The position numbers and the translations under genes were made by a program. A stretch of DNA of 64,000 bases, taken from positions 23,560,001 through 23,624,000 of the forward strand of contig OZ365110.1 in the NCBI GenBank assembly GCA_977030845.1, written 5' to 3'. Numbering within the stretch: the first letter of the stretch is position 1; every line of letters starts with the position of its first letter. Below the pieces are notes generated by a model. That model was not told where the DNA came from. It made no database searches and worked only from the letters and a program-made list of their open reading frames with translations. Below are positions 3,447 to 51,456 of this stretch, one piece after another. Origin of the DNA: Fimbriosthenelais zetlandica (lineage: Eukaryota).

Positions 3447-6400
3447 CTTATAAGTCCAGTGTAACTACATAAACACATTATGGTCAGTGCATCCTGCTGA
3501 AATCCATGGTTATTTCCATATTTCCTTTACTGTAAACTAGGCAAAAATTCCTGCTGTAAACTATTTCTACCCCTTAAATTTGCCACGCAATCAGCACCAA
3601 TGAAGTTACAATTTGATTCTATCCACATTAAATTTTAAGCCACAAAAGAAACAGAACCGACAACATTTGAGACAAAGACCAAATATAAGATTTTTCTTTC
3701 AACTTCATCGTCTTCCATTTCCTTATTCAATGCAACAGCAGAAGCAATCAAAGACAATTGAATAAATGTCGGAAGTGGAAATGTTTCATATTGACAGTCT
3801 GTGCATGTATGGCATAGATAGGTATGGTGGCCCAAAAGAGGCAATATTTCAGAGAACGATATAGAGAAGATAGATAGTTACACTGCCATATGAGAATAGA
3901 ACAACCACTATAAATGTCATGCCTGTCTCCAAGCAAGTCACTCGGGATTCCCTGAAAAAAGAGCTCGATTTTCTTGCTCTGTCTTCTTTGCAGTGCCATG
4001 CTTTCTGGAACTAAAAATGCATAGAAAGGAATTCTAACTACGGAATTTGAAATTCAATACTGATATACAATATTGAATATTGACCATTAAAATAACATTA
4101 TTCGGGATATAAAATAGGTTATCCAATTAATCAATTGCCACACAAGATTTATAATGACTTTCATGTCATAATTTTAATAGCTGGGTTCCAAATAAGAGAG
4201 AAGATATTATAGATAGGCATATATATGCCTCATGCCCAAAGTAAATGCACAGTCAACCGCTCAAAGAGAGTTCTTCCCCAGTCTCTGTCTAGACTCGTTA
4301 TTAAGAAGTAGGAAATATACCCTCAGAGACACTGGGATGCAGGACTCTCAGTGCCCCGACTCGGGATTAATTTACTTGATTCCAAATCATTTACATTAGA
4401 ACAGTCCCTGTCTTATCATGGTGTGCCACTCACGGTCTAATTTCCCTCCCTGAGCGGACTCTCCTTGTACTATGATAGAGCAAATGAATACAAAACGATC
4501 TTGACCAAAAATCTGTTGTTGGTTCTCTCTAGGAATCATTCTGCAGGAAACACTGCATTAAAATTCCGAAACAATATTGATTTTAGTTTCTTTATCAGAT
4601 GTTTTATTAAAGAAAATTATACTTTAAATATCACAACGGATATCCAATCATATCCAACTTCGGGGTATACGACTTTACAATTTGTTTTCATAACCACTTC
4701 CCACCTTTGGAAAAAAATACTAAAACTTTATCTTAGAAATAATTATAGGAATCCTTACCCCCTCCCTGAAATTTCTTCCTAATTCTCTCTTATGGTATAC
4801 GCTTTCATTCCTTTACTACCAGGACCAGGACTTTAATGTCAGAGAGACATCTAAGCTTAGTGACAGCTATAGGATCCAATAGCCTGGCAGATAATGCAGT
4901 CTCTATGAGACAGTGATGATAGGGTCACATTGCTGGATGTGACTTTGATTCATACCCTGTCATATCTATGTGGATCACCCACGGTAGATCTACCCTTCTA
5001 TAGGTTGCCCTGGATCCTATTATAAAGGTGTACTGACAGTAAGCTCTGATCATACATCTCCATTGACAGCTGATGACACATAAAGGTCGCTATTGACAGC
5101 CAAGGTGACAGCCCATAGAGAGGGCTATAAAAGAAATGGCCAGACTGAATCAATGCTGAATAGGCCTGGAGTCTGTAAATGTTGAATCAGGGTGAATAGG
5201 AGTATGAAAAAACTTAGTAGAACTTTATGATTTTTGCTTGTTGGCAGAATATCTCACAGCTTCTGCGAGTGTAAAACAGAGGTAATGGCTCAAATATTAT
5301 ATCAAATTCAGTTGTTTCTGAAATTAGCCTTACTCTTATACTCTTATATTATGGGTTCTGCGAATGGCTGCGACTGTGCCAAAACGTATCTTGGGAGGGA
5401 AGGAGGGCAGAACGAGCCAAAAGTTCTCATTAACATATATATTTTACCAGGGACTGCAGCTATAGGATGTACCATTCACATGTCAAGTTCTTGATGTACT
5501 TCCAAAATGCTGTCAGTAAGACAGTCAGTAGTGTTAACCATGTCCTCCCGTTGTACTGGGCCTCTTCGATTTCTCTTTAATGACCTATTTATACCATAGG
5601 CCTACCGCATTGAGCTAAATCGAGTGTCTTGGTCACACTTCTAAAATAACCATTCTTGCCTTTTCCAGTAGTAAGATAGGATTTTGTAAATACAAAGTAA
5701 GGTTTAATATAATGATATAGAGGTACCATAAAATTTACCATGGTAAAGGGAGAATAGACCAGGAACGTGTCACGTGAGTGCAAGTCCTGAAGCCCACAAC
5801 ACGCATGCGCAGTTGCCCTAAAACATGCATCTTCCCAGGGATCCAGATACGGTATAGATAGACGGCTTTCTTTTTATAGATTTTATGTCTTTTCATACGT
5901 TGACCTCCCCCTGGGCAATTGCTTGTCAACAGATGGGATCAAACACCATTTTGCTGATGGGAGAGTGGCATTGGCAATATACAAATGGCATGAAAAACAC
6001 ATTGACACACATACCTCCGTCCTCTCATTCTAATCGATGGGCAAAAGCGCTTACCTATACGTACTTGTAGTTCACTTCTAATCTGAGCCCGTTCTAGGCA
6101 TGATTGTGCACTTTCCGTTGCATATTGTGGGGGTTAGGGCTCGTACAAGCACATTATAAATTTACTCTAAAAAAATTCCAGTTGGTTACATGTCAGCTTT
6201 CGAAAGCAATCTCTCCCCAAAACCCCATGCGTCAAACATAAACATACATCCAATCCCCTCAGTCAAATCCATCTCGATAAAATATGACTTTATGTTTTGA
6301 AATCAGTTTTATTTATTAAATTTTGTAAGCAATTTTTAAGCAAAGATTTTCCACGAAGGATGAATTAGAATTCCCAGGGGACAAGGGCACTTCAAGGCCT

Positions 6401-7765
6401 GTGTGCGTGTCCATTTTATCTGCCAAATTCCATCAGAGAACCTTTGGTTAAACTCGTGTTCCCCTCCGGATTTTCACTCAAACAAATGTTTAACCCGATA
6501 CATTTAAAAAAATAAATATTAAAAGAAAAAGGATATTACTCTGCCAAGGTATTCGTATAAAACACTTCCAATACATTACATCAAGGGGCTATAAGTTATG
6601 TAGCAATCCCACCCCCTCTCCCAGTGGCCTGGCACCCCTGTAATTAAAAAGTCGGGATCGCTTTCCCTGAGGGTAACTAAAAGCCCAATATGGGAAAGGA
6701 GACTTATTAAACGTGGAAACATCCTACAGATAATAGTCTGTGCCACCCTCTGTTCATCGGATTCCTCGCACCTGTTCCATATACCTGTACATAGTGCCTC
6801 AAAGATCTTACAACGATATCATGCACCCTGTTCACACATGCATACAAGATCCTGCATCTACTTACCTCAAATATATCAAAGACTCGATTTCCATGCAACT
6901 AGTACCTCAAAAATATCATTCCCCCATTTGTAAAACTGTATGTCACAGAACAAGAACTTTCACTCGCAAAAATCATGCGCAAGTTGCAGCGAGTCCTCAC
7001 TGGGTTTGCAGTGAAAAAACACTGTGACAGACAACTCCAGCGTGTACACCTGGTTGGCTCCAGCGCTGAGACAGATCTTTTGCAAGCAGGAGCCAGCTAT
7101 CAGTCATACAACAAGGGGTGTGGGTGTTTAATTTGTTTCTGATATTAAGCGATTCGAAGATTGAAAATAACACACTTTATGTAGGAGTTGTCACAGACTA
7201 TAGCTCCTATAGCCTCCCTCTCATGGACCTATCTCAAATAAGGAAGGCGTGATGAATTAACGGTGGGAGAGCAATTAATCAACACATATTATGAAGTCTT
7301 GCCGCTTGGAGATCAGTCCCAACTTAATTGCTTGTTCATCATGCCGTTTCTCATTATTAAACTGACCGATTTTGCCAGCTTTATCACTGGGGACCAAAGT
7401 GACATCTTTTCACAAAGAAAATCCCCAGTACTTAGTACCGTTAAAGCCATCCCAATCTTCTAAGATTAAGATTGGTTCATTTGTGCAGAATGACTTATAA
7501 GTTATTGCTATTGAACTTTTCCACCACGCCCTATACACTGGAATCCCCATAGCCGTAATATTAAACACGCACTTCAGGAATTTGTGGATGAAGATATTTG
7601 AATGGACCCTATTCATCCAACATTCTCTAATGCACCCACTTCCGTTTCCTGTGTGCATGCTCACTCTACTATTTCCTCTTCCCTTTATATTTCCATTCTC
7701 TTACTAATAACATAATAATAACATTTTAATATAAGAAAGATCTATCTATCAAAATAGGTGATTTT

Positions 7766-29700: not shown

Positions 29701-32700
29701 TTAGCAGAAATTTCAGTGACACTCATTATCTAATCTAATTCTATCTGATTCATTGCTCACAGTTCAATGCTATAATCTCTTCTGCGAATGGTGAAAGAGA
29801 GGGTCATTCACTGCTCGCGAGATGCCCAATGCACCAAGCAGTCTGGACCTGTTTTCATGCAGTAAAAACAACATCCGGATCGGTCTTTTCGTACAATTAT
29901 AATGGTCTATTCATGGGCATAGTTTCGAGAACGATCATAAATTATTTTTCCCGACGACACTGATATTTGTAATCTAGATTTGGAAAGTAAAGGATATAAA
30001 TTATAGACCTTTTAAATGGCCAATATTATACTCTACTTTCTACTCTCCTAACGTTCGAATGATCTAAGAATTAACTTACAGAATTCCTTTAAAAAAATCG
30101 CGGTTATATTTTAGTACGTATACCAGAAATGGAGAGGAGATGTATAATTATACAAGTACCGTGCGGAGCCCTTGATATGCATTATATTTTTTTCAATAGT
30201 GTTTCCCAACTTCCCTCAATCAGTTTCACTCTATATTTAGGCAAATTGCCAATTTCAAGAGCTTCATCTCTATCTGGGCAGTACGAGCCGGAAGGAGAAT
30301 TGAAGCACATTTTGATTTGATGCTTCATACTGAACTGATACAAAAGCCTATCTATGTATTAGAAAGTAGCCCTAGGCCAAACTAAAATGGGAATATTAAA
30401 AACTCATTTATTTTATTGCCAACAGGATATGGACATTTCAAAAGCAGAAAAGATGAGTTCATAAAAACGATCTATCGGTAAGGATTATATGAATTTTGGA
30501 ATTCGAGTAAACAGACCTCAGTTCATTTCCACAAAATGGCTCTTAAAATGTGTACGAATGGATTGATTATATTTATGTTCATCATTTAGTTGTCGCGTCA
30601 AATAATCTTGATATTCATTAACTATAGAAAAGGAGGAGGGAAAGTCAAAGGAACATGTGGGGAAGAAGCAGGAGCGGTCATGAACAGTTCTTAGCAACTG
30701 CAATCCCTTCTGGCCAGATGTGAGCCGAGTGCATTTTCTCATGACACTGAGCATTGTCTGGTTATAAATTTACATTTTATATATTATTATGAGGAGATGA
30801 GCCTCGAGGTCCCTTGTCCATGTGTTCTTTGATCAGTGGTCATGAACAGTTCATAATAATATTATTATTCACATCTGAGCAGATGAGTGACTAATAACCA
30901 GAAAACAAGCACTGGATCCAGAGGGGAAGAGAAAGGTGTTGGAGATCTATGCACATGCAATCTAATAACTCTCAGCAGAAGCTCATTAAATGATGGAGTT
31001 AACAATGGTTTCCTCTTTGGCTACTGTAACAGTGCTCAGTGACTTCTTTTGCAACAGGTCACTGTTTGGATAAACATTTATCCGATGGCTTAAAGGCAAG
31101 GAGACGAGAAGAAAATTGAGAAAGGCAGGAGCGGTCATGAGCAGTTTATAACAAAAATATTAATGTTTCATTATCAGTAATTGGTTAAGACAGATATTGG
31201 TAAAAGCTCAAAGGTCATGGCATAATGTCAGATTTCCTGCTGTTGGCCCTCCTTGATTTTCCCATGGTTGTTAACCCCAGCATCGCCCACTCCCTCGCGA
31301 GGCCAGAGAAAATTAATCATGGTATTCACACGAAGTAATTGATGACTTTCAGGAAAATAAACATAACCATTCTCAAGGTAACACTTTTATCATGAAACCG
31401 GTCCAATCTCCTTCAATGGGTGAAACATGCAATATAATTACCTGAAATCCACGATAAAATATTAAAACATTTAATACTTCGCTGATAGTTGTATTGAACC
31501 CAAGATTTATTCATAGTATAACCATGCAGGCGTGTTCTGCTGGAATCTAAATGAACAGCAAGTTATGACATCAAGATTTCCATTTTAAATTAGACTACAA
31601 AGATCTTGAAGGAACTTCTCCACCGAATGACCCTCATTGGACATCGGCTATATGTTCCAAAATTCATTCCGAGAGAAAGCAATTGAGAAAAGTGTGGAGC
31701 TCTTGTGGACTATTTCTGAAAATGTACCGTGAAGGGATAAGAGTTTTTGAGAAACAATACGTGGGTATTTTCCTTTGTTTGGCCTCATCTATAGGTGCTG
31801 GTGCCACGGAGTAGTGTTATCAGGGAAAACATGCGGCCCCAATCCAACTGTGTGTCGGCCTGTCTTCCCCCTCCATTCTGCTAAATCCTGCCTGTGAATG
31901 AGATATGGAGATCCCACGTACACACCTAATGGCACGGCTACCATTTGCACCCAGATTTGGCTGCTCTAGACCTGACCAACTATAACCTTATCTTCAGCAG
32001 GTTCATCTCATATAAATAGCCATGGTCACGAAAAACCATTTTTGTATTGTATTGTGAAAACATACTTGTTACTGTTAACCCAACAGTGTGAAAATCGATA
32101 GGAAGATCAGTTATTTATAACAGGTCATTGTTCCTTAGATACCCGTAAAATGAAAATGTCAGATTTGTCAAAGATTATTTTCATGTGATGTTAAAGGGAC
32201 GCTATGGCGGAGGCGCAAAAAGCAACACGAAGGCCTCTTTCATTTTGAGTTCAGTCTCGAGTTCAGATAGGTGTCGTAAAATTTATTGAAACGTCTAATT
32301 TCCGCTTTTCTACCTAACCACTATGAACCTGTTCATCTGTGCACGATATTTATAAGTTATTGGAAAAATACATGTTTTTGATATGTCGTAAAGTGTACAA
32401 TATTAGGTCGCATGGTGACCTACATATCGCGCCTAAGCACTGGCGGGAAATTGTGGCCAACCTTATTCCCTTTGATTCTCTTCAACCTTGATTAACAACC
32501 CGTGTGGTGTGACAAAAGTCTATATTATACATGATCATATGTCACCTTCCTGGCCTTTGCTTTCCCTAAATGTCTCATGTGATTGCGACATTTTAATCTT
32601 GACAATGAATGACAAATCAATGACAATGATTACACTGTTAGAATGAACTACATCAATGTCAGGTGATTTCACTTGGCGCGACCACAGCTTTTTATGAGCC

Positions 32701-33084
32701 ATTTACCGATGTCCGTTTTACCTCTGCCAATTAACATAAATGGCCGCCAATTATTTTTGAGGCAAGGGTATGCTAATGCCAAGTACCTATGTCATGTGTT
32801 TTTAATTGGCCACACCAATTAAATCTTAAATGGCCAAACCAATTATAGGATTAGGGAGAGCCTCTTTTCACTTGGCTATACCAATTATATTATAAATGGC
32901 GGTACCAATTATAGGATTAGGTGGGCCTGGGCCATTTAGTTTTGAAATATTTATATTATTAATTTTGTGGTTAAATATGGTTGCAAATAATTTACCACTA
33001 ATTATAAAATTAAATAAACGCACATATGAAATATTATGAACAACTTTTATTCGATAATCCCTCGAATATATATACAAAAATCTA

Positions 33085-33720
33085 ATGCATTATCACAATG
33101 GAAATCATGATAATAATCAAAATAATCCATCAAAAAATAACAATGGAATCTATGTATGGAATAATTAAAGCGTTATCACATAATGCAAACAAGCCTAATC
33201 AAAATAGACATGGATGACAAATGGACACAATTGTACCAAAATGTTGATACTTTCATCGACACACAATATTAAATATCTCACAAATCTAAATATATAAAAA
33301 AATGTAAGCATTATCACAGAATGGTTAAATAATCATCATGAATGGTAAATGTACACAGGTGCACCCAAGATTCTGAAACTTTCGTCACAAGAAAATATTA
33401 AATATCTCACAAATCTAAATATAAAATAAGTAAAGTATTACTACAAAATAAACATAATTAACATGGATGGTGAATACCGCAAAATATACAATAATTGATG
33501 GCCTGATCGAGAGAGCTAAGTAAAAAATATCAAAAATTTCTAATATCTCTAAAACATGTTTACACAAAAACTTAAGGCATTGTCACAGGATGAGAAGTAG
33601 CCTAATCATGGATGATAAATGTACACAGATGTACCCCAGATTGTGATAGTTCCATCCTCACACTAAAATATTATTACCACTGAAATATAAATATACAGTA
33701 ATTTAAAGTATTCCTAATTT
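33085..33720. repeat. Degenerate ~130-bp tandem array (about 4-5 units)
   Basis: AATATTAAATATCTCACAAATCTAAATAT is exact at 33265 and 33394 (period 129). TAAATGTACACAG occurs at 33346 and 33616, and GCATT(A/G)TCACA recurs. Confidence 0.75.
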
Positions 33721-35036
33721 AGGAACGGTGGGTAGACGAGATGTGATTAGATGGCTTAAATTCAGACATAGAGGGATATAATGGGTTCCCTTTTTTAAGC
33801 ATGTTTCAGAAGGTCTCATGATGAGAAATTAGTCCATTATCCTGCGTCATTTTCCTTGAAATGAATTAACCGCGTCAAATCAGCACTTTTTAGACAGTGC
33901 CATTGTGTTGAATGTCATTTGTTCACATAATTTATATACAATTGCATTCCAATATTCCATTGAAATTGTGCATACCGTGTGTCTCTTTTTAAACAGATCT
34001 GTGTCTCATGTCCTCATGCACAATATGTCTCCAACGATTTTAAGGTTGTGTTGAGGTGCCAATCGCGTCGAATTTTAGCCATTTACATATCCATACATAC
34101 GGTATTCCAATAGCATGTGTTACATGGCGACTTGATGTATTCCAGATTTGGTCAGCCTCATTTCAAATGATTTGTGTGGGATGAATTCTTTCCTTTACAT
34201 GAGGACTCTGTAAAGACAATAAACGAGGTGTTATAACACAATATATTAATCTTAATAAAAAAGGTTCAGAACTTTGGGAATAATAATGATTAATATGTCT
34301 TATCAATATAATGTTGGTCAATGAATCATTAGCAAATATATACTAACCTGTAACCGCTGTAATGTGTGTCAGTGCCTTCTTGATGAGTGATGCCCATTGA
34401 ATTGACATCACACTTTGGATACCATCGAAACATACGTACCGTTAATCTGAATTAAAATAATAAAAATAAGAACACAAGTGTAAGTAATTTGTCTGGAAAG
34501 TCGCCTTACTAATTCATATATATTCATAACATTTTTACAAAAATGGACTATGGATGGATATGGATTTAACAGTAAGCATTTTCCCCTCACACCTTACACG
34601 GAAAGCCTCACCTCCAAAATGGGTGGGGGTTAACATATGGTAACAGGTGGTATCGTGACCTAATTATTCACCAATACTTATTAACACCTTTTTACATACT
34701 TCAAAAGTACCTTTGATGACCTCAAATAAATGTGAACATTATTAAAGGTAAGAAATTCCCCAGAATTACCAACAAAACAAACAGTGAAGTTCTTGCTAAG
34801 CGGTTTACTCAATCCATTTCCACATAGGTAAATTCACAACTGTTTTAAAGAAGTCAAAACAAACAACTTACCATGTTATGTGCAGTCATCAAGAAGAATA
34901 TTCATACCACTTATGTACATTCCTTGCAACTTCTCTTGAGGCTGGAACATATAACAGGTCGATATTGAAATATGTATGAAATGGGGCTATAAATTAAAAG
35001 TGAGAAAGCTTAAATTGATACATTGATGCCGCGAGT

Positions 35037-35163
35037 TTAAGGGGATAAAGGGACGCCCTTGACCAGTAGGTTTACGGGGTCTGGTCAGCCATATAGCCGG
35101 CTGTCTGTCGGGCATCATGGCCGGCCTTCGCCCTGTCTGGTCAATCGGAATTCAACCCCCCTT
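35037..35163. mobile_element. GC-rich MITE-like insert in intron 1 of the minus-strand transcript
   Basis: Ends AAGGGG/CCCCTT and inner IR TTGACCAG (35059) / CTGGTCAA (35137). It forms a sharp GC-rich island in AT-rich sequence. Confidence 0.4.
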
Positions 35164-35329
35164 GGACAATAATCCCTCATTACTTGCCATCAAATGTAGA
35201 TATTTTATCAAGGTACTTTATGGACATGTGGTCACAAATAAAGTAAATATTCTTTTAAACTTACCTGTTATGACGAATGAGTTTTGCATTGAAGTAGGCA
35301 TGATATCATGCTGTAACTGTTCGATTTCG

Positions 35330-35520
35330 AAAATGGCCGTTCGAAGCGCCGAGGTGAATAAAGGTTAAATTATAGTTTTAGCGACATTAAACACACGGAA
35401 CATCTTTGCAGATACTCAATTTTCTCGGGTTTAAAGGCAATATTTAATTTTGTATAACACCCGTGTATGATCATTATATTTTAAAGGGAAATCATTTTTC
35501 TGTAGGCTTAGCCAATAGAC
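35330..35520 (-). promoter_or_regulatory. Candidate promoter of the minus-strand transcript
   Basis: Local CpG patch, YY1-like AAAATGGCCG (35330-35339), TATAAT-like element near 35370 on the minus strand, and CCAAT at 35512-35516. No good acceptor precedes exon 1. Confidence 0.35.
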
Positions 35521-36502
35521 GACCAGGACTCAATATTTGGTGCGGAGCTAATATCATGGTGTCATATTAATCGCTCCTCCAATCTTTGTCTTGTTTCACC
35601 CGTATCATTAGTGTAACTAATCATAAATTTCGATTTAATTAAAGGAGTAATTGATTCTATAAATCCATTGCACTGGTTAAACGACATTTTATGGACAGTA
35701 AAATACTTATTACTCAAAATTATTGGAAGATATTGGCCGTGATAACCTAAAGCTTAACCCCAAATTCGCACATTACGGGCGACCCATATTTCGCCCCACA
35801 CCTAGCTATATCCTCTATTCTATAGTCATGTTAATATATATTTCGCACATCATTCACACACCCAAAAGTGTGAATCAATGTAATTGACTATGCTTTTCAC
35901 ATCTAAAACTGGGCTTGTGGGACTTGGTCATCAGTTGTGAACTCAGCCCACACTAGCTGTAATCTCCTATGCGGGGTGAGGCCGGCAGGTGGGGGGCGGG
36001 GGGGGTGGGCTTATGCTAATGAGGTAGGGTAGCATTCATAGCCTGAGGTTTGTTTGAATTAATTGAAGGCCAAGTATTCAAGGAAATGCCATTGAATTTC
36101 AATTGACATAAGTGTAATTTTAAATGGCCGAAATTGGGCTAAGAGATGCGCCCCGAGAACAATAGAATTTCACTTGGCTAAATTAGGTATGTGAATTCTA
36201 CGTGACATTGCGTGTTTTTAAATGGCGGTCACTTAGTTTTAACAGGTTTTCTAACAGTGTAGGCCTGCTAGCAGGTCTCTTAAAGACAGACTCATTCGTA
36301 CTTGATGTAATTATTCCTATCTAAACTCATTGGATTAATTTAGACTCCCTTTACCATTCACTGTTCATTATGTCCTATTTGCATCCAATCAATTACACCT
36401 TTAACCTGTTCCTCTCTGAATCAGATTCCTTTAATTAATGTTCCTTCACTAGATTTTGACCAATGGTCGAGTAATACAAATATTTTTCTTCTCGTTTTTC
36501 AG

Positions 36503-50061: not shown

Positions 50062-51456
50062 ATGGAGCCCACTGCAATGCTGCTCAATTTGACTGGACCC
50101 CTACACCAACCAGTTCACACTGGTGATTACTCTGGGGGAGATGCAGGTCTTGAAAACATGGCTCGAAATGACAGCAACTCTGTCGTTTTAGAGGATTCAG
50201 CCTCCCCTGTGAGCGCAGGAGAGGCTGTGGTCTTCGCCGCCTTCACCTCAGCTTGTATATGTGCCACAATCATTGGCAACATCCTTGTGATATTATCCGT
50301 GTTCACCTACAGACCTTTAAGAAATGTGGCCAACTTTTTCATCGTGTCTTTAGCAGTGGCTGATTTGGCAGTGGCTATCTTGGTCATGCCATTTAACGTG
50401 GCTAATTTCATCATAGGCCATTGGGTGTTTGGGGAAGTATTCTGCAACATGTGGTTGACGTTTGATGTATTAACATGCACAGCCTCAATCCTCAATCTCT
50501 GTGCTGTGGCTGTTGATCGTTACTACGCCATACATGACCCCATTAACTATGCCCAAAAGCGGACCATAGTGAGAGTCTTAATTTCTATAGCCATAGTCTG
50601 GCTGGCATCGGCTGTCATATCAGTGCCCCCTATATTTGGCTGGAACAACAAAGCTGACAGTATAGGATTATATGACAAATGGACTTCCATGTGTCAATTG
50701 ACAGATGAACGTAGTTATGTCATTTATTCGGCTTCGGGTTCGTTTTTCATACCACTTTTCATCATGACATTTGTTTATGTGAATGTATTCAGAGCCGTAA
50801 GAAGACGGTTACGAGAACGTGCTGATGCAGCCACGGCAGCCAAGCTAGCTGCAGCGGTCGGTAAAGGTAGCCAAAAAGGGACAGGATCTAAATCAGGAGG
50901 GTCCATGATCCAGAAGTCCACTGACTCAGCCACTCTAGAGGCAAGTTCCGGGGAGGCGGGTGACATGCAGGCAGGAGATACCGACAATGGATCCGTTCTC
51001 CCTTTGGATCAACAAGCGTCAGTGGGTTTTAGCTCAAGTAAATCGATGAGGAAACTGATGGAGGACACAGATGGTGTGAACAACAGTGGGTCCCCCTCTG
51101 TACATGACAAGAGAGATGGGGGAGGAGGTGGAGGAGGAGGAGGGGGGAGAGGCCAGGTCCAACAGTTCCTGGAAGAGAAGGCCAGGATTTCCTTGTCAAA
51201 GGAAAGGCGAGCAGCTCGCACAATGGCCATCATTATGGGTGTATTCGTGCTGTGCTGGCTACCCTTCTTCCTCATGTACGTTATCTTTCCCTTCTGCCCA
51301 TCTTGTGCCGATACGGACCCCCGCCTTATAAACTTCATTGTGTGGTTAGGGTACATCAACTCCAGCCTCAACCCTGTCATTTATACTATATTTAACATCG
51401 ATTTCAGGAGGGCATTTAAGAAACTTTTACAGGGCAATTGGCGAGGAGGACATTGA
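50062..51456 (+). CDS. Oct-TyrR: Intronless class A aminergic GPCR, tyramine receptor type 1 (Oct-TyrR/TAR1 family), 464 aa
   Basis: Seven hydrophobic segments and a TM1 GN motif, LAVAD in TM2. TM3 FDVLTCTASILNLC has the amine-binding Asp (D135), followed by DRY (D152) and DPINYAQKRT. TM5 is IYSASGSFFIP. ICL3 is long and ends ISLSKERRAART; CWLPFF and NPVIY follow, then a short C-tail. DPINYAQKRT and ISLSKERRAART are hallmarks I recognise from insect Oct-TyrR/TAR1 receptors. An in-frame TAA at 50002-50004 supports the ATG. N-glycosylation sequons NLT and NDS are in the N-terminus. Confidence 0.92.
   Translation: MEPTAMLLNLTGPLHQPVHTGDYSGGDAGLENMARNDSNSVVLEDSASPVSAGEAVVFAAFTSACICATIIGNILVILSVFTYRPLRNVANFFIVSLAVADLAVAILVMPFNVANFIIGHWVFGEVFCNMWLTFDVLTCTASILNLCAVAVDRYYAIHDPINYAQKRTIVRVLISIAIVWLASAVISVPPIFGWNNKADSIGLYDKWTSMCQLTDERSYVIYSASGSFFIPLFIMTFVYVNVFRAVRRRLRERADAATAAKLAAAVGKGSQKGTGSKSGGSMIQKSTDSATLEASSGEAGDMQAGDTDNGSVLPLDQQASVGFSSSKSMRKLMEDTDGVNNSGSPSVHDKRDGGGGGGGGGGRGQVQQFLEEKARISLSKERRAARTMAIIMGVFVLCWLPFFLMYVIFPFCPSCADTDPRLINFIVWLGYINSSLNPVIYTIFNIDFRRAFKKLLQGNWRGGH
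51118..51147 (+). repeat. GGA-rich trinucleotide repeat encoding Gly10 in receptor ICL3
   Basis: GGG GGA GGA GGT GGA GGA GGA GGA GGG GGG, in frame. Confidence 0.9.

What the first reader, a model, noticed from the sequence alone, without database searches (positions are those of the whole stretch)
33030..35360. Hidden 5-exon antisense transcript with no long ORF
Seen: four consecutive minus-strand introns (34942-35264, 34447-34871, 34208-34347, 33680-33975) each have a near-consensus donor and a pyrimidine-rich acceptor. They define exons of about 90, 70, 99 and 232 nt plus a terminal exon ending near AATAAA. A CpG/YY1/CCAAT patch sits at the 5' end. Spliced E1-E4 encode only peptides of 32 aa or less (e.g. 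MFRWYPKCDVNSMGITHQEGTDTHYSGYRVLM). Inference: this is a lncRNA or smORF gene lying antisense inside the putative 5' intron of the tyramine receptor locus, or a decayed spliced transposon gene. E4 has a stop-interrupted frame (SSRHVTHAIGIPYVWICKWLK) that is faintly helix-turn-helix-like.
Basis: partly seen in the sequence, partly recalled or inferred. Interest (0 to 1): 0.72.

Follow-up and report, generated by a model that had tools for sequence, protein, structure and literature searches.

The report
Young jumping-gene copy, not lncRNA
The supposed five-exon antisense gene lies wholly inside one of about 42 near-identical copies of a 3.6-kb cut-and-paste jumping gene with no gene of its own, and its splice-like signals are no more frequent than chance gives, so it is an ordinary repeat and not a hidden host gene.

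Summary
The whole 33030-35360 stretch, however, lies inside a 3627-bp repeat (window 32633-36259). This repeat has 11-bp terminal inverted repeats, CACTGTTAGAA and TTCTAACAGTG, and a 2-bp target-site duplication. The duplication is TA in 16 of 17 copies checked and CA/CA in one.

The genome holds about 390 left ends of the family. About 42 copies belong to the young subfamily that carries "exons" 1-2, and these are 99.76% identical pairwise. No variant has an ORF over 125 aa, and there was no Pfam or Rfam match, so the element is non-autonomous.

An older 4.2-4.5-kb subfamily shares "exons" 3-5 but lacks the segment with exons 1-2. It has AT instead of GT at the intron-4 donor. Its "exons" are no better conserved than its "introns". 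Four-intron chains of equal quality occur about twice per 64-kb strand in shuffled sequence. The "YY1" site is one of six copies of the element's own repeated motif WAAATGGCS.

No RNA run was listed, so transcription is untested. The mobilising transposase was not found, so the superfamily (Tc1/mariner, PHIS or CMCT) is open. No earlier scan note covers this family. This is an ordinary finding.

The parts
32631..32632 (.). Left target-site duplication, TA
   Evidence: The 2 bp flanking each end are identical in 17 of 17 copies checked (16 TA, 1 CA/CA). The third base never matches.
32633..32643 (+). Left terminal inverted repeat, CACTGTTAGAA
   Evidence: Similarity between copies stops exactly here. 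The 31-mer starting here occurs 389 times in the genome, against 0 for the control.
32667..32940 (+). Left subterminal motif array (TTTCACTTGG, WAAATGGCS, CCAATT; 66- and 133-nt spacing)
   Evidence: Repeat families D2, D5, D12 and D13.
33076..33700 (.). Internal AT-rich imperfect repeats of about 130 and 270 nt.
   Evidence: Repeat families D1, D3, D4, D6 and D7. It is the least conserved part between subfamilies, at 87.5% with indels.
32633..34778 (.). Left part shared with the older 4.2-4.5-kb subfamily. It contains E5, I4, E4, I3, E3 and part of I2.
   Evidence: Identity to L012, L013 and L015-L022 is 86-97%.
34779..35592 (.). 814-bp segment found only in the young 3.6-kb subfamily. It contains part of I2, E2, I1, E1 and the 'promoter patch'.
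   Evidence: Older copies have an unrelated segment of about 1.5 kb here. Two 31-mers from this segment each occur 42 times in the genome; every place I compared with the copy coordinates lies inside an element copy.
35593..36259 (.). Right arm shared with the older subfamily, including a right subterminal motif array at 36116-36230
   Evidence: Identity to older copies is 86-90%.
36249..36259 (-). Right terminal inverted repeat, TTCTAACAGTG
   Evidence: The 21-mer ending in the TA occurs 240 times, against 1 for the control.
36260..36261 (.). Right target-site duplication, TA
33030..35360 (-).
   Evidence: The motifs are present but within chance expectation. The I4 donor GT is AT in all 10 older copies. 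No coding frame is open.

Best explanation
Window 32633-36259 is one copy of a young, non-autonomous class II (cut-and-paste, TIR) DNA transposon inserted at a TA dinucleotide.

Shown: 11-bp terminal inverted repeats, a 2-bp target-site duplication, dispersed copies with unrelated flanks, and no transposase gene.

Inferred: the element is moved in trans by a transposase encoded elsewhere. That enzyme would recognise the CACTGTTAGAA termini. It probably also recognises the subterminal WAAATGGCS and TTTCACTTGG motif arrays.

The window copy belongs to a subfamily of about 42 copies that amplified very recently (99.76% pairwise identity). This subfamily arose from an older 4.2-4.5-kb family when the middle segment was replaced by an 814-bp piece of unknown origin.

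It is not a host lncRNA or smORF gene.
For: Copy number: at least 30 full-length matches at 98-100% identity. There are 389 left ends and 240 right ends, against 0 and 1 for the controls.

Boundaries: they are sharp and identical in all copies. The 2-bp flanks match in 17 of 17 copies, including one CA/CA pair that shows a true duplication.

Age: eight young copies are 99.76% identical pairwise.

No gene: the longest stop-free frame in the window copy is 101 aa, and 125 aa in any variant. There are no Pfam matches and no Rfam matches.

Subfamily structure: E1-E2 lie in a segment that older copies lack.

No sign of a constrained transcript: the I4 donor is AT in 10 of 10 older copies. Identity between subfamilies is E3 96.0%, I3 95.0%, E4 94.8% and I4 94.3%. 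E4 has 3-7 stops in every frame in all 11 copies.

Chance level: shuffles give 2.1 comparable four-intron chains per strand and 1.47 strong-donor clusters per strand.

Motif: six of the window's nine WAAATGGCS sites lie in the element, all on one strand.
Against: Transcription could not be tested, because no RNA or DNA run was listed.

The three best donors are good matches to the consensus (12.7, 9.7 and 8.5 bits). The I3 donor and all three acceptors that lie in the shared part (I2, I3, I4) are unchanged in the older subfamily. However, the surrounding sequence is about 95% conserved anyway.

The donor matrix was written from textbook consensus values, not trained on this species.

No autonomous partner was found, so trans-mobilisation and the role of the motifs are inference.
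Confidence: 0.75

Rival explanations
1. The element carries its own spliced non-coding transcription unit on the minus strand. The promoter would be in the young-specific segment and the polyA signal near the left arm. The '5-exon transcript' would then be real but mobile and present in about 42 copies, for example as a regulatory or piRNA-precursor RNA.
For: Three donors match the consensus well, and every donor has an acceptor in the right order. A CpG-rich patch lies upstream of E1 and an AATAAA lies in E5. All splice dinucleotides are intact in the 8 young copies aligned.
Against: The chain is within chance expectation. The I4 donor is absent from the older subfamily and E1-E2 are missing there. 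'Exons' are not better conserved than 'introns'. No RNA evidence could be obtained.
Confidence: 0.1
2. The splice sites are relics of the intron-containing transposase gene of the autonomous ancestor, and the element is an internal-deletion derivative.
For: The minus-strand layout ends about 400 nt before a terminal repeat, as transposase genes often do. Several DNA transposon superfamilies have intron-rich transposase genes. An earlier, unchecked scan note (s1-207648) reports a nine-exon Kolobok transposase in this genome.
Against: No Pfam match in 20 ORF pieces from the young and old variants. No tblastx match to 51 Tc1-like or Harbinger-like transposase loci of this genome. Every frame of E4 is closed in all 11 copies. 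E1-E2 sit in a segment acquired only by the young subfamily.
Confidence: 0.08
3. The 814-bp young-specific segment, or more of the interior, is a captured fragment of a host gene (transduplication). The exon-intron pattern would be inherited from that gene.
For: The segment replaced an unrelated older middle part, so it was acquired. It holds the two best donors and the CpG-rich patch.
Against: Two 31-mers from the segment, allowing up to 3 mismatches, each occur 42 times; the places I compared lie in element copies and none shows a separate parental locus at >=90% identity. There is no coding frame and no Pfam match. The other candidates of the first look for the 814-bp query (188, of which 40 were scored) could not be inspected.
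Confidence: 0.06
4. It is a single-copy host lncRNA or smORF gene antisense to the receptor locus, as the finding's title says.
For: Only the splice-like motifs themselves.
Against: The stretch is repeated at least 30-42 times at 98-100% identity with transposon ends and target-site duplications.
Confidence: 0.01

Closest known systems
Non-autonomous Tc1/mariner (ITm) elements
   Same: Insertion at TA with a 2-bp TA duplication. Short terminal inverted repeats with 5'-CA...TG-3' ends. No transposase gene. Amplified in bursts of near-identical copies.
   Different: At 3.6 kb it is much larger than typical MITEs. None of the 21 DDE_3 loci fetched carries its terminus. DDE_1 (pogo) hits listed on contigs C1 and C10 do not lie between paired ends. 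The mariner family PF01359 was not searched.
PHIS superfamily members with 2-bp or TA duplications (ISL2EU, PHISTA)
   Same: PMC12730594 states that Harbinger relatives make 0-, 2- or 3-bp duplications and describes a TA-duplicating lineage. DDE_Tnp_4 transposases are very abundant here, and many copies are intact and identical.
   Different: None of the 30 DDE_Tnp_4 loci fetched (+/-1.5 kb) holds the terminus or the subterminal motifs. One terminus 3.2 kb from a DDE_Tnp_4 hit on C1 is not repeated at that family's other copies.
CMCT group (CACTA/EnSpm, Mirage, Chapaev, Transib, ESTA)
   Same: PMC12730594 states that these share 5'-CA..TG-3' termini and make 2-5-bp duplications, and that ESTA makes TA duplications. 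The element starts CACTG and ends CAGTG, and it has subterminal repeat arrays as CACTA elements do.
   Different: Transposase_21 (PF02992) gave a single sub-threshold hit in the genome. No partner was identified.
TE-derived or TE-borne lncRNAs and transduplicated gene fragments (Pack-MULE type)
   Same: A non-coding, multi-exon-looking unit sits inside a DNA transposon.
   Different: There is no transcript evidence. No parental host locus was found. The exon chain is within chance expectation.

Membership tests
Class II TIR DNA transposon (non-autonomous) | Terminal inverted repeats at sharp, copy-invariant boundaries | tested here: met
   CACTGTTAGAA and TTCTAACAGTG sit at the point where similarity between copies ends.
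Class II TIR DNA transposon (non-autonomous) | Target-site duplication of fixed length flanking each copy | tested here: met
   The 2-bp flanks match in 17 of 17 copies (16 TA, 1 CA/CA), and no third base matches.
Class II TIR DNA transposon (non-autonomous) | Many dispersed copies with unrelated flanks | tested here: met
   389 left ends and 240 right ends across many contigs. Flanks are unrelated.
Class II TIR DNA transposon (non-autonomous) | No transposase ORF in the element | tested here: met
   The longest frame is 101-125 aa. No Pfam match was found.
Class II TIR DNA transposon (non-autonomous) | Empty (pre-insertion) site, or an autonomous partner with the same ends | tested here: inconclusive
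   The empty-site 34-mer is absent from the assembly. No partner is among the 51 transposase loci fetched.
Tc1/mariner superfamily | TA target-site duplication | tested here: met
   This feature is not exclusive to the superfamily (PMC12730594).
Tc1/mariner superfamily | Mobilised by a DD(E/D) Tc1, mariner or pogo transposase whose element shares the termini | tested here: inconclusive
   DDE_3 loci lack the terminus. DDE_1 loci could not be fetched. PF01359 was not searched.
PHIS (ISL2EU/PHISTA) | DDE_Tnp_4-type transposase element with the same termini | tested here: inconclusive
   The top 30 of 478 candidate loci lack the terminus within +/-1.5 kb.
CMCT (CACTA/Mirage/ESTA) | 5'-CA..TG-3' termini and a 2-5-bp duplication | tested here: met
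   CACTG...CAGTG termini with a 2-bp duplication. The criterion is taken from PMC12730594.
CMCT (CACTA/Mirage/ESTA) | Partner transposase with the C(2)C and H(3-4)H motifs | tested here: inconclusive
   Only PF02992 was searched. It gave one hit below the cut-off.
Spliced host lncRNA or smORF gene | Unique host locus | tested here: not met
   At least 30-42 near-identical copies.
Spliced host lncRNA or smORF gene | Junction-spanning RNA reads | not testable with these tools
   No run was listed for this sequence, so read laying could not be used.
Spliced host lncRNA or smORF gene | Splice sites and exons conserved above background among relatives | tested here: not met
   The I4 donor is AT in 10 of 10 older copies. 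Exon and intron identities are equal at 94-96%. E1-E2 are absent from older copies.
Transduplicated host gene fragment | Parental host locus outside the element | tested here: inconclusive
   Each of the two 31-mers hits 42 places at up to 3 mismatches; the places compared lie in element copies. More diverged sources were not examined.

The most novel reading that the evidence does not exclude
A non-autonomous DNA transposon has acquired a promoter-bearing 814-bp segment and now spreads a spliced, non-coding five-exon transcription unit to about 42 loci. It would be a mobile lncRNA gene whose RNA might feed small-RNA silencing or affect the host genes it lands in, here antisense and upstream of an aminergic receptor gene.
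Probability: 0.07. Interest if true: 0.45.

Novelty: new member of a known kind. Interest (0 to 1): 0.1.

Why it matters
Mainly as a correction. A gene-like pattern read from a single window is a recently active repeat, so it should be masked and not annotated as a lncRNA.

Two modest points of interest remain. First, the family is very young (99.76% identity, about 42 copies), which implies that a transposase recognising CACTGTTAGAA ends has been active recently in this animal. Second, TA-duplicating elements with CA...TG ends could belong to any of three superfamilies, so finding the partner would classify the family. The insertion lies 13.8 kb upstream of an aminergic receptor ORF and may be polymorphic in populations.

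Tried and rejected
RNA evidence: two run searches, kind rna on 33030-35400 and kind any on the whole element, listed nothing (one search did not complete). Read laying was therefore unusable. An exact-protein look-up of the 83-aa plus-strand ORF found no record.

Protein homology: 20 ORF pieces from the window copy, older variants and nested inserts gave no Pfam match. The only rows were two meaningless ones at E 0.15-0.19. This set included the 'HTH-like' E4 frame.

RNA families: no Rfam match at E<=1.

Autonomous partner:
- DDE_3, 21 loci: no terminus.
- DDE_Tnp_4, top 30 loci: only L066 has a terminus, and that terminus points away from the transposase, so it is an adjacent insertion.
- DDE_1: coordinates only.
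- Transposase_21: one sub-threshold hit.
- Longer 5.4-6.1-kb variants (L015-L017) are old-subfamily copies with nested inserts and have no transposase.
- Motif enrichment in the 51 transposase loci: none.
- TACACTGTTAGAAS occurs 129 times against 10 for the control, so other families share the terminus. They could not be fetched.

Empty site: not present in the assembly.

Rejected duplication lengths: 3 bp (Harbinger, CACTA) and 5 bp (Transib). Only 2 bp match.

Earlier scan notes: nothing on this family.

Full report
**Observation**

- Donors: CAG|GTAAGT (35264), ATG|GTAAGT (34871), CAG|GTTAGT (34347) and ACG|GTATGC (33975).
- Acceptors: pyrimidine-rich, at 34942, 34447, 34208 and 33680.
- Exons: 96, 70, 99 and 232 nt, followed by a 650-nt tail with AATAAA near 33050.
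- Coding: the spliced product is closed in all three frames. The 32-aa peptide spanning the E3/E4 junction is present.

**The region is a repeat**

A search of the window's own 447-Mb assembly with 33030-35400 returned at least 30 full-length matches at 98-100% identity on many contigs. Aligning nine of them with 1.5-kb flanks showed that similarity starts and stops at the same two points in every copy.

The element is window 32633-36259, 3627 bp. It starts CACTGTTAGAA and ends TTCTAACAGTG, and each end is flanked by TA. In 17 copies with both ends in hand, the two flanking bases match on both sides every time. Sixteen are TA and one is CA/CA, which shows a true 2-bp duplication. A third base never matches.

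The left-end 31-mer occurs 389 times with up to 2 mismatches, against 0 for the control. The right-end 21-mer occurs 240 times, against 1.

This is a class II TIR transposon.

**No gene**
- The longest stop-free frame in the window copy is 101 aa, and 125 aa in any variant.
- Rfam gave nothing.
- tblastx against 51 Tc1-like and Harbinger-like transposase loci from this genome gave nothing.

The element is therefore non-autonomous.

**Family structure**

Pairing left and right ends by coordinate shows that most complete copies are 4.1-4.5 kb and a minority are 3.6 kb. I fetched several of each.

The 4.2-4.5-kb copies are 86-97% identical to the window copy over 32633-34778 and 86-90% identical over 35593-36259. 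Between those parts they carry an unrelated segment of about 1.5 kb. Window 34779-35592 is thus specific to the 3.6-kb subfamily. It holds E1, intron 1, E2 and the 'promoter patch'.

Two 31-mers from this segment, allowing up to 3 mismatches, each occur 42 times. Every place I compared with the copy coordinates lies inside an element copy. Eight young copies are 99.76% identical pairwise, so the burst is very recent.

Variants of 5.4-7 kb are copies with nested insertions and carry no transposase.

**Is the exon chain meaningful?** Three tests say no.

1. Comparison with 10 older copies. The intron-4 donor GT is AT in all ten. Identity is E3 96.0%, I3 95.0%, E4 94.8% and I4 94.3%. E5 is the least conserved part, at 87.5% with indels. 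'Exons' are not better kept than 'introns'.

2. Coding potential. E4 has 3-7 stops in each frame in all 11 copies.

3. Chance expectation. I used a donor matrix written from textbook consensus values (my own approximation) and a pyrimidine-tract score. Four-intron chains then occur once on the minus strand and twice on the plus strand of the real window, against a mean of 2.1 per strand in shuffles. Clusters of three or more strong donors within 1 kb occur four times in the real window, against 1.47 per strand in shuffles.

**The 'promoter patch'**

The 'YY1' core at 35330 is one of six same-strand copies of WAAATGGCS in the element. The others are at 32737, 32827 and 32893 in the left arm and at 36121 and 36219 in the right arm. 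The whole 64-kb window has only nine. TTTCACTTGG occurs three times in the arms, out of four in the window. I read these as the element's own protein-binding motifs, most likely for the mobilising transposase. This is inference.

**Transcription**

No RNA or DNA run was listed for this sequence, so no reads could be laid. Whether the element is transcribed or spliced remains untested.

**Superfamily**

A TA duplication is the hallmark of Tc1/mariner (established knowledge). It is not exclusive. PMC12730594 states that Harbinger relatives make 0-, 2- or 3-bp duplications and describes a TA-duplicating lineage. It also states that the CACTA/Mirage/Chapaev/Transib group shares 5'-CA..TG-3' ends with 2-5-bp duplications and includes a TA-duplicating lineage.

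The element fits all three on these criteria. Only the partner transposase would decide, and I did not find it.
- DDE_3 loci lack the terminus.
- The top 30 of 478 DDE_Tnp_4 candidates lack it within +/-1.5 kb.
- Transposase_21 is essentially absent.
- The 14-mer TACACTGTTAGAAS, which excludes this family's own two ends, occurs 129 times against 10 for the control. Other families therefore share the terminus, and one of them may be the partner.

**Context**

No other fragment of the family lies in the window. The element sits 13.8 kb upstream of an intronless 464-aa aminergic GPCR ORF at 50062-51456 on the plus strand. Its closest solved relatives are alpha-2A adrenergic and 5-HT1A receptors. 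'Tyramine receptor' and '5' intron' are plausible but unverified.

**Verdict**

This is a real, very young, non-autonomous TIR DNA transposon of an unassigned TA-duplicating family. It is not a hidden host gene. Interest is low.

Noticed in passing
window 36262-36279: Just past the right TA duplication the flank reads GGCCTGCTAGCAGGTC. This is a near-perfect palindrome that starts TA-GGCC. Earlier scan notes on this genome describe TA-GGCC-TA insertions as possible excision scars of an unidentified transposon. This element's own ends (CAC...GTG) would not leave GGCC.
   Followed up: no
window 50062-51456 (+): An intronless 464-aa aminergic GPCR ORF. Its best solved relatives are alpha-2A adrenergic (E 4e-77) and 5-HT1A receptors. 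The third intracellular loop is glycine- and serine-rich.
   Followed up: partly
G000:C25:37597475-37597888: A tandem array with a 40-bp period in which each unit carries TACACTGTTAGAAC, the terminus of this transposon group. At least 10 units are listed. It looks like a satellite built from a terminal repeat.
   Followed up: no
G000, genome-wide: DDE_Tnp_4 (PIF/Harbinger-type) transposases are very abundant, with 478 candidates. Several sets have identical scores and intact open frames of 289-469 aa, which suggests several currently active Harbinger families. DDE_3 (Tc1-like) is rare, with 21 hits.
   Followed up: no
L007 and L008 (G000:C10:52825624-52839635): Two young copies lie in inverted orientation about 8.6 kb apart. 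Both are interrupted at the same point (window-equivalent 35487) by about 0.8 kb of extra sequence. This looks like an inverted segmental duplication of an already interrupted copy.
   Followed up: partly
L012 (G000:C10:10455000-10464999): An old-subfamily copy and its surroundings are repeated in tandem with a 4582-bp period (L012 470-2600 matches 5052-7182).
   Followed up: no
L011 1193-4613 (G000:C10:32968692-32972112): A young copy carries a 3.4-kb nested insertion at element position about 224. Its longest ORFs (96 and 88 aa) have no Pfam match.
   Followed up: partly
This shows how easily such chains arise in this AT-rich sequence.
   Followed up: no
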